Virus record (IMG/VR): IMGVR_UViG_3300028676_000003
Location: 186,001 to 250,000 of that record
Length of the DNA: 64,000 nt
Reading direction: 5' to 3' (one strand)
Shown here: positions 49,166-51,459 of the stretch, in pieces
Numbering within the stretch: position 1 is the stretch's first letter
How the letters are laid out: each line of letters starts with the position of its first letter
Made by a program: the position numbers and the translations under genes
The notes under the pieces: generated by a model
Seen by the model: only the letters and a program-made list of their open reading frames with translations
Database searches by the model: none
What the model was told of the DNA's origin: nothing

Positions 49166-49252
49166 GGTGTTCATAGAAGCGTAACGGTAGCGTGCTTGGT
49201 TGTGAGCCAAGTGGTAGGAATACTCCTGCGGGTTCGAATCCCGTTGTACACC
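49166..49252 (+). tRNA. tRNA-His(GTG) with long variable arm
   Basis: G-1/C73, CTTGG-TTGTGAG-CCAAG, extra AGGA..TCCT hairpin. Confidence 0.7.
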
Positions 49253-49261
49253 CAATTATAT

Positions 49262-49336
49262 GGTGGCTATAGCTCAGTCGGTTAGAGCATCGGTTTGTGG
49301 TACCGAGGGTCGTGGGTTCGAGCCCCACTAGTCACC
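49262..49336 (+). tRNA. tRNA-His(GTG)
   Basis: G-1/C73, TCGGT-TTGTGGT-ACCGA. Confidence 0.9.
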
Positions 49337-49542
49337 CAATATTCCGTAGAGGCAAGTCAGGTATGTATAGCTATAACCCGATTAGAAGGAGAAAGTGGTT
49401 CGAATCCACCCCATGGAGCAAATTTATTTAGTAAGTCAAAAGAGTAAACTGGGTATTGACTGCTGTATACAAGCGGTAACCTAAGGAGGTGTGCAGGTTC
49501 GAATCCTGTCTAAATAACAAATGATTATTGAAGAGAAACATT

Positions 49543-49743
49543 ATGGACAAATGGACATATGATAAAACAGTAAGAGAATTGGTTCAAAATATTAAGAATT
49601 ATGAAATTCATGCCGCTAGAGAAATTAAAAACAACGAAGTAGCAAGAAAGGATAAGGTTAGAAATAACTCCCAAGAATATCTTTTAATATGTAAACAACG
49701 ATACAAGGATTTTACAGGAGAAGATTATCAACAAGAAACTTAA
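49543..49743 (+). CDS. Hypothetical protein
   Basis: ORF within tRNA array. Confidence 0.45.
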   Translation: MDKWTYDKTVRELVQNIKNYEIHAAREIKNNEVARKDKVRNNSQEYLLICKQRYKDFTGEDYQQET

Positions 49744-49753
49744 TCTAACGATT

Positions 49754-50005
49754 ATGGAAGAGAAGATAGAACAATTGGAAGAAGAAATAATCGAGTTGAA
49801 GTATCAGCTTAAGAAAGCCAAGGATAAAGAATTAATCTACTTGGATATACTTTCAAATGTTTATTCTGCATTAAGAACCCTCTTCAAAAGAGAGGAAGAA
49901 AATGAGAGATTTAAACTAGGAGATATTATCAACTTTAGAGAGAATCTTGTAAACCTAAAAACGTCACTGGATGACTACATTAGGATTTATAAATTGAGAT
50001 TATGA
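49754..50005 (+). CDS. Hypothetical coiled-coil protein
   Basis: ORF track. Confidence 0.5.
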   Translation: MEEKIEQLEEEIIELKYQLKKAKDKELIYLDILSNVYSALRTLFKREEENERFKLGDIINFRENLVNLKTSLDDYIRIYKLRL

Positions 50006-50056
50006 AACAAGAATTTGATATGCTTTGAGGTCTACTAAACAATAGACTGAAAAGTT

Positions 50057-50251
50057 ATGAGTGTAAATCGAAACAGAGCCAAATATAAAAAGGCTACGAC
50101 AAATCATGAATATTTATCTATGCAAGATAATTTCTTATTCAACGATTGGTATTGGGAAGATTACGGAAGTAAAAAAAGTGGTATCTACACATGGAAATAC
50201 AGAATGTATAGAACGTGGAAATACAACAGAAAAACACAATGGAAGCCCTAG
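50057..50251 (+). CDS. Small basic aromatic-rich protein
   Basis: 'YRMYRTWKYNRKTQWK'; TAG stop. Confidence 0.5.
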   Translation: MSVNRNRAKYKKATTNHEYLSMQDNFLFNDWYWEDYGSKKSGIYTWKYRMYRTWKYNRKTQWKP

Positions 50252-50262
50252 GTTTCCAAAAT

Positions 50263-50336
50263 AGGCAGTTAGCTCAACTGGTTAGAGCACCTCGCTGATA
50301 CCGAGGAGGTTATGAGTTCGACTCTCATATTGCCTA
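50263..50336 (+). tRNA. tRNA-Ile(GAT)
   Basis: CCTCG-CTGATAC-CGAGG, A73. Confidence 0.9.
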
Positions 50337-50338
50337 CA

Positions 50339-50593
50339 ATGAAAAGAGAATTTACATCGAACGAAAAGGAGTTTGTGGAAGCAATTGTTGGATTATTTAT
50401 CCTTTTGCCAAACCCTGAATTAAATAGCCGTAAAGGTGAAGTAATGAAGGTTGCCTATGACGTTTTAAATAAGCTCTTGGATGAATATGTTCCTGAACCT
50501 GAGAGAGAACTCACGGAAGAGGAATTAGAAGAAATCGAATTCAATGATATGTATTATCAATACCTATTAGAAGACGATGAAGAAGAAATATAA
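50339..50593 (+). CDS. Acidic hypothetical protein
   Basis: ATG just after the tRNA. Confidence 0.5.
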   Translation: MKREFTSNEKEFVEAIVGLFILLPNPELNSRKGEVMKVAYDVLNKLLDEYVPEPERELTEEELEEIEFNDMYYQYLLEDDEEEI

Positions 50594-50667
50594 GGTCTTA
50601 TAGCTCAGTTGGTTAGAGCAGCTCGCTCATAACGAGAAGGTCACAGGTTCGAGTCCTGTTTGGACCA
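50594..50667 (+). tRNA. tRNA(CAT), probably Ile2 (lysidine-modified, reads AUA)
   Basis: GCTCG-CTCATAA-CGAGA; body resembles Ile2 tRNAs. Confidence 0.8.
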
Positions 50668-50673
50668 CAATAT

Positions 50674-50756
50674 AGTGATGTGGATGAATGGTTTAGTCGC
50701 CAGCCTGATACGCTGGGTACGCAAGTACAACGTGGGTTCGAGCCCCACCGTCACTA
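50674..50756 (+). tRNA. tRNA(GAT) with long variable arm
   Basis: CCAGC-CTGATAC-GCTGG; GTAC-GCAA-GTAC extra arm. Confidence 0.75.
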
Positions 50757-50760
50757 CAAG

Positions 50761-50888
50761 GAGTAATGCTTGTTGGAACAAGATTATGGAAGGTTAGCTC
50801 AACCCTAACTTGAAGTAAAGGAGTTTGATTTTTGGCTCGCCCGCTTGTAGGGTTGTGTTCAAAAATACAGCAAGGGTTGACATTGCTC
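50761..50888 (+). ncRNA. Unknown structured RNA between tRNAs
   Basis: Nested pairings GAGTAATG/CATTGCTC, CTTGTTG/CAGCAAG, GAACA/TGTTC. Confidence 0.5.
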
Positions 50889-50894
50889 ACTTAT

Positions 50895-50968
50895 TCTCCT
50901 GTAGCTCAGTTGGTTAGAGCGGCACCCTGTTAAGGTGAGGGTCACAGGTTCGAATCCTGTCAGGAGAG
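50895..50968 (+). tRNA. tRNA-Asn(GTT)
   Basis: TCTCCTG/CAGGAGA, CTGTTAA loop, G73. Confidence 0.92.
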
Positions 50969-51019
50969 CAAAATGATTAACTTTTTTAATTAATCAGATA
51001 TTTATAATAAAAGAATATT

Positions 51020-51388
51020 ATGAATACTGAAATTAAAGAATGTAGAAATCATGGAATAACTGAATTTGTTAAAAGAGCTGATGGTTATTGCAGATGTAAA
51101 AAATGTGCAGTAGATGCAGTAAACAAACGAAGAATAGTTTTGAAGGAAAAAGCTATTGAATACAAGGGTGGTGAATGTCAGGAATGTGGATATAAAAAAT
51201 CTAAAAGAGCGTTAGAATTTCATCATTTAGACCCAAATGAAAAGGATTTTGGTATATCAGCGAATGGTTATACAAGGTCTTGGGAAAAAGTAAAAAGTGA
51301 ATTAGATAAATGTATCTTATTGTGTGCAAATTGTCACGCTGAGAAACATGAAGAAATTGAAAAGAATAAAAAGGATGGGTTGCTTTAG
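51020..51388 (+). CDS. HNH endonuclease
   Basis: 'CQECGY', 'ALEFHHLDP', 'CILLCANCH'. Confidence 0.85.
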   Translation: MNTEIKECRNHGITEFVKRADGYCRCKKCAVDAVNKRRIVLKEKAIEYKGGECQECGYKKSKRALEFHHLDPNEKDFGISANGYTRSWEKVKSELDKCILLCANCHAEKHEEIEKNKKDGLL

Positions 51389-51459
51389 TTGGTCGAAAAG
51401 TCTAGACTGTTAATCTAGTGAGCATTGCTCCACCGTGGGTTCGAATCCCACCCTGTCCT
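51373..51459 (+). tRNA. tRNA(GTT) with long variable arm and U73
   Basis: CTAGA-CTGTTAA-TCTAG; GAGC-ATT-GCTC extra arm. Confidence 0.75.

What the first reader, a model, noticed from the sequence alone, without database searches (positions are those of the whole stretch)
49166..51459. Long-variable-arm second copies of His, Ile and Asn tRNAs
Seen: tRNA(GTG) 49166, tRNA(GAT) 50674 and tRNA(GTT) 51373 each have an extra hairpin arm, and each has a normal isoacceptor nearby; the GTT one has U73 rather than Asn's G73. Established: long arms are normally limited to Leu, Ser, Tyr and Sec. Inference: nuclease-resistant variants, decoys, or anticodon-swapped bodies charged with a different amino acid.
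Basis: partly seen in the sequence, partly recalled or inferred. Interest (0 to 1): 0.6.

Follow-up and report, generated by a model that had tools for sequence, protein, structure and literature searches.

The report
Phage tRNAs with an extra arm
A 369-kb phage carries second copies of its His, Ile and Asn tRNAs that have an extra hairpin arm normally seen only in Leu, Ser and Tyr tRNAs. These belong to a conserved tRNA family, found almost entirely on phage-like DNA, that keeps the marks of its proper amino acid and has been overlooked or annotated as a pseudogene.

Summary
ARAGORN, Rfam and unconstrained folding all give five-arm cloverleaves for tRNA-His(GUG) 49166-49252, tRNA-Ile(GAU) 50674-50756 and tRNA-Asn(GUU) 51373-51459. 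Each has a normal twin nearby.

The window lies in a complete 368.5-kb virus record with about 60 tRNAs. A fourth long-arm tRNA (Cys) and several short Leu tRNAs lie outside the window.

These are not one-offs:
- The same His/Ile/Asn trio sits in syntenic arrays of other viral contigs.
- 24 distinct long Asn tRNAs show strong compensatory covariation, including in the extra arm.
- A strict family pattern hits 23 viral contigs and none of 185,579 prokaryote species genomes.
- Cultured Cellulophaga phage phi4:1 carries one as its only Asn tRNA, annotated "tRNA-Pseudo".

Across about 630 phage tRNAs, long-arm copies carry the discriminator and first base pair of their anticodon's amino acid. All 18 of the informative cases (Cys, Thr, Gly, His) do so, and the His copies have G-1:C73. 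Their arm geometry is Tyr-like, not Ser- or Leu-like. Anticodon-swapped mischarging is therefore disfavoured.

The exception is the window's Asn copy, which belongs to a conserved G1:C72/U73 subgroup of unknown charging.

Why the arm is kept is inferred, not shown. Escape from tRNA-cutting host defences is the leading idea, and the phage also encodes a tRNA repair kit. No expression data could be obtained.

The parts
49166..49252 (+). tRNA-His(GUG) with long variable arm. G-1 is at 49166 and C73 at 49252. The arm is GGUA-GGAA-UACU followed by CCU. The D region is irregular.
   Evidence: ARAGORN. Rfam 31.1 bits, partial. The MFE fold uses the 8-bp acceptor helix from 49166. The ATG-G(-1)-G1-U2 ... 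ACC-C73 frame is shared with all His tRNAs of relatives. Long-arm His tRNAs occupying the same array position occur at L036:2692-2777, L118:11509-11601 and L120:9308-9400; their core identity to the window copy is only about 65%.
49262..49336 (+). Normal tRNA-His(GUG), the short twin, with encoded G-1.
   Evidence: ARAGORN; Rfam 65.7 bits; flanks read.
50263..50336 (+). Normal tRNA-Ile(GAU), the short twin. A1:U72, A73, anticodon loop CUGAUAC.
   Evidence: ARAGORN; Rfam 68.2 bits.
50674..50756 (+). tRNA-Ile(GAU) with long variable arm. A1:U72 and A73. It has a 3-bp D stem, the same anticodon loop CUGAUAC as its twin, and the arm GUAC-GCAA-GUAC followed by AAC.
   Evidence: ARAGORN; Rfam 51.0 bits, full length; MFE fold. 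Orthologues at L068:643-727, L030:8565-8650, L118:10650-10735 and L120:8449-8534 have arm stems GAGG/CCUC, GUGA/UCAC and GUUCC/GGAAC, which are compensatory changes.
50895..50968 (+). Normal tRNA-Asn(GUU), bacterial type, with U1:A72 and G73.
   Evidence: ARAGORN; Rfam 68.7 bits.
48822..48894 (+). Second short tRNA-Asn(GUU), with G1:C72 and G73.
   Evidence: ARAGORN; Rfam 60.2 bits.
51373..51459 (+). tRNA-Asn(GUU) with long variable arm, of the U73 / G1:C72 subgroup. It has a 3-nt connector UUG, D loop AGUUGGUCGA, and the arm GAGC-AUU-GCUC followed by CACC.
   Evidence: ARAGORN; Rfam 42.0 bits; MFE fold. It is a member of a family of 24 distinct sequences with covariation in all five helices. 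Other U73 subgroup members are in L118/L120, L055, L037 and L036.
51020..51388 (+). HNH endonuclease ORF (122 aa) whose 3' end overlaps the first 16 nt of the long Asn tRNA. It may be a homing element travelling with the tRNA gene.
   Evidence: Pfam HNH, E = 2e-5. ORFs 50-64% identical lie beside the long Asn gene in at least 11 other viral contigs.
44647..45765 (+). CCA-adding tRNA nucleotidyltransferase. None of the three long tRNAs encodes CCA.
   Evidence: Pfam PolyA_pol, E = 3.9e-34; NCBIfam CCA tRNA nucleotidyltransferase, E = 2.1e-59, below the family cut-off.
53817..54743 (+). Polynucleotide-kinase-like P-loop domain plus a cyclic-phosphodiesterase-like domain. This is an RNA end-healing module of the tRNA-repair type.
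   Evidence: Pfam AAA_33, E = 2.8e-8, and tRNA_lig_CPD, E = 9.4e-6. tblastn hits phage polynucleotide kinases. A homologue is in L118/L120.
62737..63861 (+). Rnl1-type RNA ligase ORF (374 aa), the sealing half of a tRNA repair pathway.
   Evidence: PF09511 RNA_lig_T4_1, E = 5e-14, at G000:248890-249492, which is window 62890-63492. ORF limits.

Best explanation
The three genes are real, selectively maintained isoacceptor tRNAs. They belong to a phage-borne family of tRNAs that have the class II shape (a variable-arm hairpin) but serve class I amino acids.

Their anticodon, discriminator base and first base pair are those of the amino acid the anticodon specifies. The most likely working is therefore as follows. 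They are transcribed within the phage tRNA array and trimmed. The phage CCA-adding enzyme completes their 3' ends. The host's own HisRS and IleRS charge them, as does AsnRS for the G73 type of Asn copy. They then decode CAY, AUY and AAY alongside their normal twins.

The arm is short (3-4 bp), often capped by a GNRA loop, and followed by about 4 unpaired bases. It is kept by selection.

The leading but untested reason is this. The arm changes the tRNA's shape near the variable pocket, so host tRNA-cutting defence nucleases, or other tRNA-targeting toxins, fail to recognise the phage copy. Translation then continues when the normal host-like copy is destroyed.

Shown here:
- existence and structure of the three tRNAs;
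- conservation and covariation;
- restriction to phage-like DNA;
- cognate identity marks.

Inferred, not shown:
- expression;
- charging;
- the purpose of the arm.
For: Structure: ARAGORN, Rfam and MFE folds agree.

Conservation:
- The same trio (a His short/long pair, Ile-long, and a U73 Asn-long beside a short Asn) lies in syntenic arrays of L118/L120 and partly of L036.
- Long Asn also occurs in the 635-kb phage LR745206.1, whose CCA enzyme is only 36% identical.
- It occurs in cultured Cellulophaga phage phi4:1, where it is the only Asn tRNA.

Covariation in 24 distinct long Asn tRNAs:
- 96% of cells are paired.
- 18 of 24 pairs have changes on both sides.
- 0 of 500 shuffles reach the observed values.
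- The arm helix is 97% paired, with compensatory changes in 2 of its 3 pairs.
- Ile-long arm stems differ completely but stay complementary.

Identity marks follow the anticodon:
- Cys 7/7, Thr 6/6 and Gly 1/1 have U73.
- His 4/4 has C73, with G-1.
- Ile 8/8 has A73 and a non-G first base.
- Gln has U1:A72, Trp has A1:U72/G73, Pro has C1:G72.
- Overall 69 of 83 match the commonest discriminator of short tRNAs with the same anticodon.

Arm geometry:
- Ser has a 5-6 bp stem and 1 unpaired base before the T stem.
- Leu has a 4-5 bp stem and 1 unpaired base.
- Tyr has a 3 bp stem and 3 unpaired bases.
- Long class-I-type tRNAs (n = 81) have a 3-4 bp stem and 4 unpaired bases.

No matching phage synthetase: the complete genome has no class IIa or IIb aaRS and no IleRS. 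Host enzymes must do the charging.

Context: the phage encodes a CCA enzyme, a kinase-CPD healing enzyme and an Rnl1-type ligase. This is the classical answer to anticodon nucleases.

[quoted passage not shown] A phage tRNA-Tyr needs its distinct, longer variable loop to defeat Retron-Eco7 (PMC12673091, PMC13096335, PMC11555353).

Distribution: the strict family pattern gives 0 hits in 185,579 prokaryote species genomes and 23 in IMG/VR.
Against: - No expression, processing or charging data.
- The anticodon loops of the long Ile and Asn copies are identical to those of their twins. A nuclease that reads only the anticodon loop would not be evaded.
- HisRS and AsnRS are class II synthetases. 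From general knowledge (recalled, not tested), these approach tRNA from the variable-loop side, so an added arm could hinder charging.
- The window's Asn copy has U73 and G1:C72. It lacks both the G73 determinant of E. coli AsnRS and the U1:A72 mark used by GatCAB (PMC9976931).
- The His copy has an aberrant D region, a low Rfam score and only about 65% core identity to the long-arm His tRNAs at the same array position elsewhere.
- Long-arm versions occur for nearly every amino acid. There is no link to one known nuclease target.
- The HNH gene next to the Asn copy offers a purely selfish route of spread.
Confidence: 0.5

Rival explanations
1. Tolerated relic spread by a selfish element. The family arose from a class II scaffold; the arm geometry is Tyr-like. 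It diversified by anticodon and identity switching. It is carried between phages by free-standing HNH homing endonucleases. The arm does nothing useful. It is kept only because these tRNAs fold around it and the synthetases do not mind.
For: - HNH ORFs 50-64% identical lie next to the long Asn gene in at least 11 contigs, and in the window the ORF overlaps the gene.
- Long Asn cores are 86-93% identical among phages that are otherwise very divergent.
- Long Asn resembles long Lys(CUU/UUU) more than it resembles short Asn: 0.79 against 0.72 core identity, with the same D loop and T arm.
- Long Cys is most like a Tyr tRNA that differs at anticodon position 35.
- Arm geometry is Tyr-like.
Against: - A useless 12-16 nt hairpin would be expected to decay or be deleted. 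Instead its helix is kept by compensatory changes across deep divergence.
- Phages keep both a short and a long copy of the same anticodon, which suggests the two are not equivalent.
- In LR756502.1 all three confidently called Lys tRNAs are long.
- In phi4:1 the long copy is the only Asn tRNA.
Confidence: 0.25
2. Mischarging or sense-codon recoding. The long arm recruits SerRS, TyrRS or LeuRS, or another enzyme that does not read the anticodon. Some AAY, AUY or CAY codons are then read as another amino acid, as with allo-tRNAs or nematode nev-tRNAs. The candidate is the U73 / G1:C72 Asn copy of the window, together with the U73 long Lys tRNAs.
For: - U73 with G1:C72 departs from both Asn charging routes (PMC9976931).
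- It is conserved in five distinct Asn-long sequences and five long Lys tRNAs.
- The window copy has G1:C72, G2:C71, A3:U70 and C11:G24. I recall these as part of the E. coli Ser set; this is memory, not a test.
- Ile-long has A73 and a Leu-like 3-bp D stem with a long D loop.
- The phage encodes a 422-aa LeuRS-like protein without an editing domain.
Against: - Discriminators track the anticodon in 69 of 83 long tRNAs and in all 18 cases with a pyrimidine discriminator.
- Arm geometry differs from Ser and Leu.
- U73 with G1:C72 also occurs in short Asn tRNAs of the same phages. It is therefore not tied to the arm.
- The first base pair of Ile-long is never G:C or G:U, unlike Leu and Tyr.
- His-long carries G-1:C73, which alone suffices for HisRS (PMC9976931).
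Confidence: 0.1
3. Decoys or non-translational RNAs. The long copies are made to soak up tRNA-targeting nucleases or toxins, or to regulate something. They are not used on the ribosome.
For: - Phage tRNA-Tyr has been discussed as a decoy or supplement against Septu (PMC13096335).
- Some irregular tRNAs are charged but not used in translation (PMC5389517).
- The window's His copy is structurally irregular.
- Two further degenerate tRNA-like sequences lie at 49343-49419 and 49425-49518.
Against: - Full retention of anticodon loop, T loop, G18G19, identity marks and a 12-bp acceptor/T helix is more than a decoy needs.
- In phi4:1 the long copy is the sole phage Asn tRNA, and in LR756502.1 the long copies are the sole confidently called phage Lys tRNAs.
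Confidence: 0.1
4. Decaying pseudogenes or tRNA-finder artefacts.
For: - GenBank annotates the phi4:1 homologue as tRNA-Pseudo.
- The His copy scores only 31 bits.
- MFE z-scores are unremarkable, from -0.8 to -1.5.
Against: - Orthologues in many contigs show compensatory substitutions in every helix.
- Anticodons and identity marks are conserved.
- Arrays are syntenic.
Confidence: 0.05

Closest known systems
allo-tRNAs and (8/4) tRNA-Ser / tRNA-His of bacteria and phages (Mukai et al. 2017, PMC5389517)
   Same: They have a long variable arm on tRNAs whose anticodons are not Leu, Ser or Tyr. Some lie in phage tRNA clusters. They were found in metagenomes.
   Different: Allo-tRNAs have an 8/4 or 9/3 acceptor/T-stem split, a long D stem with a tetraloop, and Ser identity (G73); they act as missense or nonsense suppressors. 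The (8/4) tRNA-His lacks G-1 and has A73 or U73. The tRNAs here are 7/5 (His has 7/5 plus G-1). They have ordinary D loops with G18G19, discriminators that follow the anticodon, and a Tyr-like arm geometry.
selC* tRNA-Cys (PMC5389517)
   Same: A long-arm tRNA that keeps its cognate identity (U73, GCA) and works in translation. It is the best precedent for a class II shape combined with class I identity.
   Different: selC* mimics tRNA-Sec (8/4 with a bulge). It sits next to selB-like genes in anaerobic bacteria and may need a special CysRS. Here the fold is 7/5, the genes lie in phage arrays, the family spans many amino acids, and no dedicated synthetase exists for His, Ile or Asn.
Nematode nev-tRNAs (PMC3333845, PMC4300185)
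   Same: Class II-shaped tRNAs with Gly or Ile anticodons, conserved in a lineage alongside normal isoacceptors.
   Different: nev-tRNAs are charged with Leu in vitro. Here the first pair and discriminator follow the anticodon's amino acid, not Leu. The setting is a virus, not an animal nucleus.
Phage tRNAs that defeat tRNA-targeting defences (T5/SP15 tRNA-Tyr against Retron-Eco7 PtuAB; T6 against Septu; T5 tRNA-Lys against PARIS)
   Same: A phage copy of a host tRNA differs in shape so that a defence nuclease spares it. For tRNA-Tyr the variable loop is the deciding part (PMC12673091, PMC11555353, PMC13096335).
   Different: Those cases alter an arm or loop that the tRNA class already has. 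Here a whole arm is added to tRNA classes that never have one. No defence system or cleavage has been linked to it.
Ordinary bacterial class II tRNAs (Leu, Ser, Tyr)
   Same: A variable-arm hairpin and commonly a 3-bp D stem with a long D loop. The arm geometry resembles tRNA-Tyr: a 3-4 bp stem with 3-4 unpaired bases before the T stem.
   Different: The anticodons and acceptor-end identity marks are those of His, Ile and Asn.

Membership tests
tRNA (Rfam RF00005, elongator cloverleaf) | Score at or above the family's gathering threshold (29 bits) with acceptor, D, anticodon and T arms. | tested here: met
   Ile-long 51.0 bits and Asn-long 42.0 bits, both full length. His-long 31.1 bits, but only model positions 9-63.
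Class II (long variable arm) tRNA architecture | A variable region of more than 10 nt that forms its own stem-loop. | tested here: met
   The variable regions are 15-16 nt with 4-bp stems. The helix is supported by compensatory changes in orthologues.
tRNA-His | GUG anticodon, an extra G-1 paired with C73. | tested here: met
   G-1 is 49166 and C73 is 49252. The same frame is found in long and short His tRNAs of the window, L036, L118 and L120. The identity rule is taken from PMC9976931.
tRNA-Ile (bacterial, GAU) | GAU anticodon with A37, and discriminator A73 (the strong determinants). | tested here: met
   The loop CUGAUAC is identical to that of the short twin, and both have A73 and A1:U72. 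All 8 long Ile tRNAs in the set have A73. The minor E. coli stem determinants were not assessed.
tRNA-Asn (bacterial) | GUU anticodon plus discriminator G73 (AsnRS route), or U1:A72 (GatCAB route). | tested here: not met
   The window copy has GUU but also U73 and G1:C72. Of 24 family members, 19 have G73 and 17 have U1:A72. The family is Asn-like, but this subgroup departs from the rule.
allo-tRNA | An 8/4 or 9/3 acceptor/T-stem split of the 12-bp branch. | tested here: not met
   All three have a 5-bp T stem and a 7-bp acceptor stem. His has an eighth pair from G-1:C73.
allo-tRNA / tRNA-Ser-type identity | G73, and a Ser-type variable arm (long stem, about 1 unpaired base before the T stem). 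| tested here: not met
   The discriminators are C73, A73 and U73. The arms have 3-4 bp stems and 3-4 unpaired bases, against 5-6 bp and 1 base in 49 Ser tRNAs of the same contigs.
nev-tRNA-like (Leu-charged class II tRNA with a foreign anticodon) | Leu identity marks (A73 with a Leu-type body) and charging by LeuRS. | tested here: inconclusive
   Ile-long has A73 (shared by Ile and Leu) and a 3-bp D stem. Its first pair, A:U, matches short Ile, not the G:C/G:U of 50 of the 56 long Leu tRNAs. Charging cannot be tested with these tools.
Nuclease-evading phage tRNA (as T5/SP15 tRNA-Tyr) | Resistance to a defined host tRNA nuclease, and rescue of phage growth. | not testable with these tools
   Only context is available: a repair kit and a literature precedent (PMC12673091).

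The most novel reading that the evidence does not exclude
The extra arm is a phage-specific mark that splits the tRNA pool in two. Long-arm tRNAs would form a defence-proof set, possibly serviced by phage factors, that keeps phage translation going while normal-shaped tRNAs are destroyed by the host or by the phage itself.

The conserved G1:C72/U73 subgroup, with Asn and Lys anticodons, would be charged by a non-cognate or relaxed enzyme. That would give deliberate amino-acid substitution at AAN codons during infection.
Probability: 0.12. Interest if true: 0.85.

Novelty: new variant of a known kind. Interest (0 to 1): 0.62.

Why it matters
Textbook bacterial tRNAs tie the long variable arm to Leu, Ser, Tyr and Sec. 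Here the arm is uncoupled from amino-acid identity in both directions. Long His, Ile, Asn, Cys, Lys, Thr, Gln and Glu tRNAs coexist with short Leu tRNAs in a group of large phages.

If the long copies are charged correctly, host class II synthetases such as AsnRS, HisRS and LysRS tolerate a bulky arm on the face they bind. That is useful knowledge for engineering orthogonal or tagged tRNAs.

If the arm protects against tRNA-cutting immune systems, it is a new way for phages to counter a fast-growing class of defences.

In practice, annotation pipelines mislabel these genes as tRNA-OTHER or pseudogenes. The tRNA content of phages is therefore undercounted.

A cultured phage-host pair, Cellulophaga baltica with phi4:1, makes the question testable at the bench.

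Tried and rejected
- Near-identity search of the array against GenBank phages found only short tRNA-sized matches.
- blastn of the Ile-long and His-long genes against GenBank phages found nothing.
- A search for recent donor paralogues inside the genome found no close relative of any long-arm tRNA, apart from a modest Cys-long/Tyr likeness. A recent anticodon swap within this genome is therefore rejected.
- tRNA-Sec: the Rfam tRNA-Sec model matches only the two Ser tRNAs, and below threshold. The three tRNAs are not Sec-like.
- Phage-encoded matching synthetases: there is no tRNA-synt_2 (Asn/Asp/Lys) or tRNA-synt_2b (His and others), and no IleRS. Only a mini LeuRS-like gene was found.
- Stop-codon recoding, suggested by the tRNA(CUA): ORF coverage rises no more with TAG as sense than with TGA as sense. 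No other genetic code is claimed.
- MAFFT alignment of the five Ile-long genes misaligns the arm. The arm pairs were read directly rather than counted.
- Codon demand as the sole reason: the long set includes the rarest amino acids (His 1.5%, Cys 0.9%) as well as common ones (Ile 7.5%, Asn 6.9%).
- Literature searches found no description of 7/5 long-arm His, Ile or Asn tRNAs in phages. The library is partial, so this is not proof of novelty.

Ascertainment caveat: most IMG/VR family members were fetched with a motif covering the 3' end of the variable region and the T arm. Invariance of those columns in alignment A1 is by construction. Counts per amino acid in those loci are biased towards Asn and Lys.

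
Full report
**What the window is.** The window is bases 186001-250000 of a single 368,549-bp virus record. The record has 33.6% G+C and CheckV rates it 100% complete. ARAGORN finds 62 tRNA-like genes in four or five arrays, and most isoacceptors occur in two or three divergent copies. An IMG/VR contig of 274 kb is the same phage. By a tblastn search with the CCA-adding enzyme, the nearest GenBank relatives are the uncultured huge phages LR745206.1 (635 kb, 36% identity) and LR756502.1 (642 kb, 34%).

**Checking the observation.** ARAGORN calls three long tRNAs: His(gtg) at 49169-49253, Ile(gat) at 50674-50757 and Asn(gtt) at 51373-51460. They are 85, 84 and 88 nt long, and each has a stem-loop in the variable region.
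- The Rfam tRNA model scores them 31.1 (partial), 51.0 and 42.0 bits, against a gathering score of 29.
- Folding without constraints returns a five-arm cloverleaf for all three.
G49166 is the extra G-1 and pairs with C73 at 49252. The same frame, ATG-G(-1)-G1-U2 ... ACC-C73, is found in every long and short His tRNA of this phage and of contigs L036, L118 and L120.
- The normal twins are at 49262-49336 (His), 50263-50336 (Ile), and 50895-50968 and 48822-48894 (Asn).
- U73 in the long Asn copy is real.
- Outside the window there is a fourth case, a Cys(GCA) tRNA of 84 nt with U73 at genome 268790-268873. There is also the converse: four Leu tRNAs of 73-75 nt without a long arm.

**They are a conserved family, not accidents.**
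- LR745206.1 has a long Asn(GUU) of 87 nt next to a normal Asn. It also has long Lys (three in tandem) and long Gln. LR756502.1 has long Lys, Glu, Gln and Thr. Both have short Leu tRNAs.
- A 23-nt motif from the junction of the arm and T stem found 88 stretches in IMG/VR. Nineteen are long Asn(GUU) and about eleven are long Lys. The rest are ordinary Ser tRNAs or attachment-site fragments.
- ARAGORN on those loci found long-arm versions of Asn, Lys, Cys, Thr, Ile, His, Met, Trp, Gly, Glu, Gln, Asp, Val and Pro.
- Contigs L118 and L120 hold the same trio as the window in the same order: His short plus His-long, then Ile-long, then U73 Asn-long plus a short Asn. The trio sits between Ser and Arg tRNAs.
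- An alignment of 24 distinct long Asn genes, made without reference to structure, gives 96% paired cells. Eighteen of 24 pairs have changes on both sides, and no shuffle of 500 or slid register comes close. The arm helix is 97% paired, with compensatory changes in two of its three pairs.
- The Ile-long orthologues have arm stems GUAC/GUAC, GAGG/CCUC, GUGA/UCAC and GUUCC/GGAAC.
- One caveat applies. Most members were fetched through a motif, so the invariance of the motif columns is built in.

**Where the family lives.**
- A strict pattern for the long Asn gene has no match in one genome each of 185,579 bacterial and archaeal species, and 23 matches in IMG/VR.
All are on MAG contigs, and 15 of the 16 sit among 3 to 23 other tRNA genes within 8 kb or less. 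Some of these contigs encode proteins with full-length PHROG matches. Mis-binned phage DNA is likely but not proven.
- The cultured Cellulophaga phage phi4:1 (host Cellulophaga baltica, Bacteroidota) carries a long Asn with U1:A72 and G73. GenBank labels it "tRNA-OTHER / tRNA-Pseudo". It is the only Asn tRNA in that phage's array.

**Which amino acid do they carry?** This cannot be measured here, but the sequences speak to it.
- Over about 630 distinct phage tRNAs, the long-arm copies have the discriminator and first pair of short tRNAs with the same anticodon.
- Cys 7/7, Thr 6/6 and Gly 1/1 have U73, and His 4/4 has C73. That is 18 of 18 where the cognate base is a pyrimidine, which Leu and Tyr tRNAs do not use and Ser tRNAs rarely do.
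- Ile has A73 in 8/8, with first pairs U:A, C:G, A:U or G:U like short Ile tRNAs. Long Leu and Tyr tRNAs mostly start G:C or G:U.
- Gln has U1:A72, Trp has A1:U72 with G73, and Pro has C1:G72.
- In all, 69 of 83 match the commonest discriminator of their short counterparts.
- G-1:C73 by itself confers His acceptance in E. coli, and the anticodon plus A73 are the strong Ile determinants (PMC9976931).
- The arm geometry is unlike Ser (5-6 bp stem, 1 unpaired base before the T stem) and Leu (4-5 bp, 1 base). It is like Tyr (3 bp, 3 bases). The long class-I-type tRNAs have 3-4 bp and a median of 4 unpaired bases (n = 81). Ser identity rests mainly on the size and orientation of that arm (PMC9976931).
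- The genome has no HisRS, AsnRS or IleRS of its own.
- Together these points argue that the host's cognate synthetases charge the long copies.

**The exception.** The window's long Asn has G1:C72 and U73. This is a conserved subgroup with five distinct sequences: the window, L118/L120, L055, L037 and L036. In L037 and L055 it sits beside a G73-type long Asn. U73 with G1:C72 also occurs in short Asn tRNAs of related phages, and in five long and one short Lys tRNA. It is therefore a separate trait from the arm. It fits neither the AsnRS rule (anticodon plus G73) nor the GatCAB rule (U1:A72) (PMC9976931). I cannot say what charges it.

**Origin.** No long-arm tRNA has a close paralogue in its own genome.
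- With the arm removed, the window's long Asn is 86-93% identical to other U73 long Asn genes. It is 0.79 identical to long Lys(UUU) genes and only 0.72 to the best short Asn.
- Long Asn and long Lys(CUU) of LR745206.1 share the D loop, the T arm and the four bases before it. Their anticodons differ at position 34.
- The family therefore looks like one scaffold that took on several identities, rather than arms inserted independently into normal tRNAs.
- An HNH endonuclease ORF overlaps the 5' end of the window's long Asn gene. ORFs 50-64% identical lie within a few hundred bases of the gene in at least 11 other contigs. This suggests spread as a homing cassette. Homing endonucleases in T-even tRNA regions are known to drive amplification of tRNA genes (PMC13096335).

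**Why keep the arm?** This is inference.
- The phage encodes a CCA-adding enzyme (44647-45765), a kinase plus cyclic-phosphodiesterase healing enzyme (53817-54743) and an Rnl1-type RNA ligase (62737-63861). Two further RNA ligase genes lie elsewhere in the genome. This is the classical repair answer to anticodon nucleases, so tRNA cleavage is probably a pressure on this lineage.
- Published work shows that PtuAB of Retron-Eco7 and Septu cut tRNA-Tyr in the variable loop. A phage tRNA-Tyr needs its distinct, longer variable loop to defeat Retron-Eco7 (PMC12673091, PMC13096335, PMC11555353).
- Adding an arm to class I tRNAs could likewise block recognition by enzymes that read the tRNA body.
- Against this, the anticodon loops of the long Ile and Asn copies equal those of their twins. 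Long arms occur for nearly all amino acids, and no nuclease has been tied to them.
- A tolerated relic spread by the HNH element is the main rival. Decoy and mischarging roles remain possible at low odds.

**Comparison with known systems.**
- Allo-tRNAs and the (8/4) tRNA-Ser and tRNA-His of Mukai et al. are the nearest published relatives, but they fail on their defining 8/4 or 9/3 fold and on Ser identity.
- selC* tRNA-Cys is the best precedent for a long arm combined with cognate identity.
- nev-tRNAs are the precedent for mischarging.
- I found no description of 7/5 long-arm His, Ile, Asn or Lys tRNAs in phages in the library searched. That library is incomplete.

**Limits.**
- There is no expression or charging evidence.
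- The His copy is structurally the least convincing of the three.
- Counts per amino acid are biased by how the loci were fetched.

**Verdict.** I classify this as a new variant of a known kind, and a cultured phage-host pair is available to test it.

Noticed in passing
genome G000:C1:271618-272886 (outside the window; L116:1483-2751): A 422-aa LeuRS-like ORF. Its best match is bacterial leuS TIGR00396 at 399 bits, spread over four stretches. It is roughly half the length of that model (843 positions), so it is too short to hold the editing and C-terminal domains. It lies directly after the Leu/Val tRNA array, which holds three of the genome's four short (73-75 nt) Leu tRNAs lacking the long arm.
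   Followed up: partly
genome G000:C1:268790-268873 (outside the window): A fourth long-arm class-I-type tRNA: Cys(GCA), 84 nt, with U73 and the arm AGC-GAAA-GCU. It is most similar to the Tyr(GUA) tRNA at 301405, which differs at anticodon position 35.
   Followed up: partly
genome G000:C1:269566-270271 and 284848-284920; also L002, L012, L022, L244: Leu-anticodon tRNAs of 73-76 nt that keep A73 and the Leu-type D arm but have only a 4-6 nt variable loop. They recur in LR745206.1, LR756502.1, LR756508.1 and Cellulophaga phage phi4:1.
   Followed up: partly
window 42804-42879: A tRNA with a CUA (amber-reading) anticodon, scoring 61 bits in Rfam. Genome-wide ORF coverage gives no sign that TAG is read as sense, so no other genetic code is claimed.
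   Followed up: partly
window 49343-49419 and 49425-49518: Two degenerate tRNA-like sequences with good T arms, lying between the His pair and the small ORFs. ARAGORN finds them only at lowered thresholds, and Rfam scores the second one 29.5 bits. They may be decayed tRNAs or odd tRNA-like RNAs.
   Followed up: partly
window 51020-51388, and loci L118, L120, L074, L037, L066, L084, L045, L111, L098, L073, L090, L071: A family of small HNH endonuclease ORFs (50-64% identical) sits next to the long Asn tRNA gene in many unrelated viral contigs. This looks like a mobile HNH-plus-tRNA cassette.
   Followed up: partly
L244:5998-6086 (NC_021788.1, about 90397-90485): Cellulophaga phage phi4:1 encodes a long-arm Asn(GUU) tRNA that GenBank labels tRNA-OTHER / tRNA-Pseudo. 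A second 'tRNA-OTHER' at L244:6454-6527 has a GCA anticodon loop, but ARAGORN does not call it.
   Followed up: partly
window 53817-54743, 62737-63861, 44647-45765; genome 253976-254566 and 306408-306917: A full tRNA repair and maturation kit: a kinase plus cyclic phosphodiesterase, an Rnl1-type ligase, two further RNA-ligase-family genes and a CCA-adding enzyme. In L118/L120 the kinase-CPD homologue matches in two pieces about 900 nt apart.
   Followed up: partly
window 46172-46615 and 54959-56479: A Peptidase_C39-like ORF (147 aa), and a 506-aa ORF on the minus strand rich in YadA-head-like repeats that is probably a fibre or adhesin.
   Followed up: no
genome G000:C1:20000-40000: A 20-kb stretch where ORFs of 120 aa or more cover only 19% of the sequence. 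Most of the genome has 75-99% coverage.
   Followed up: no
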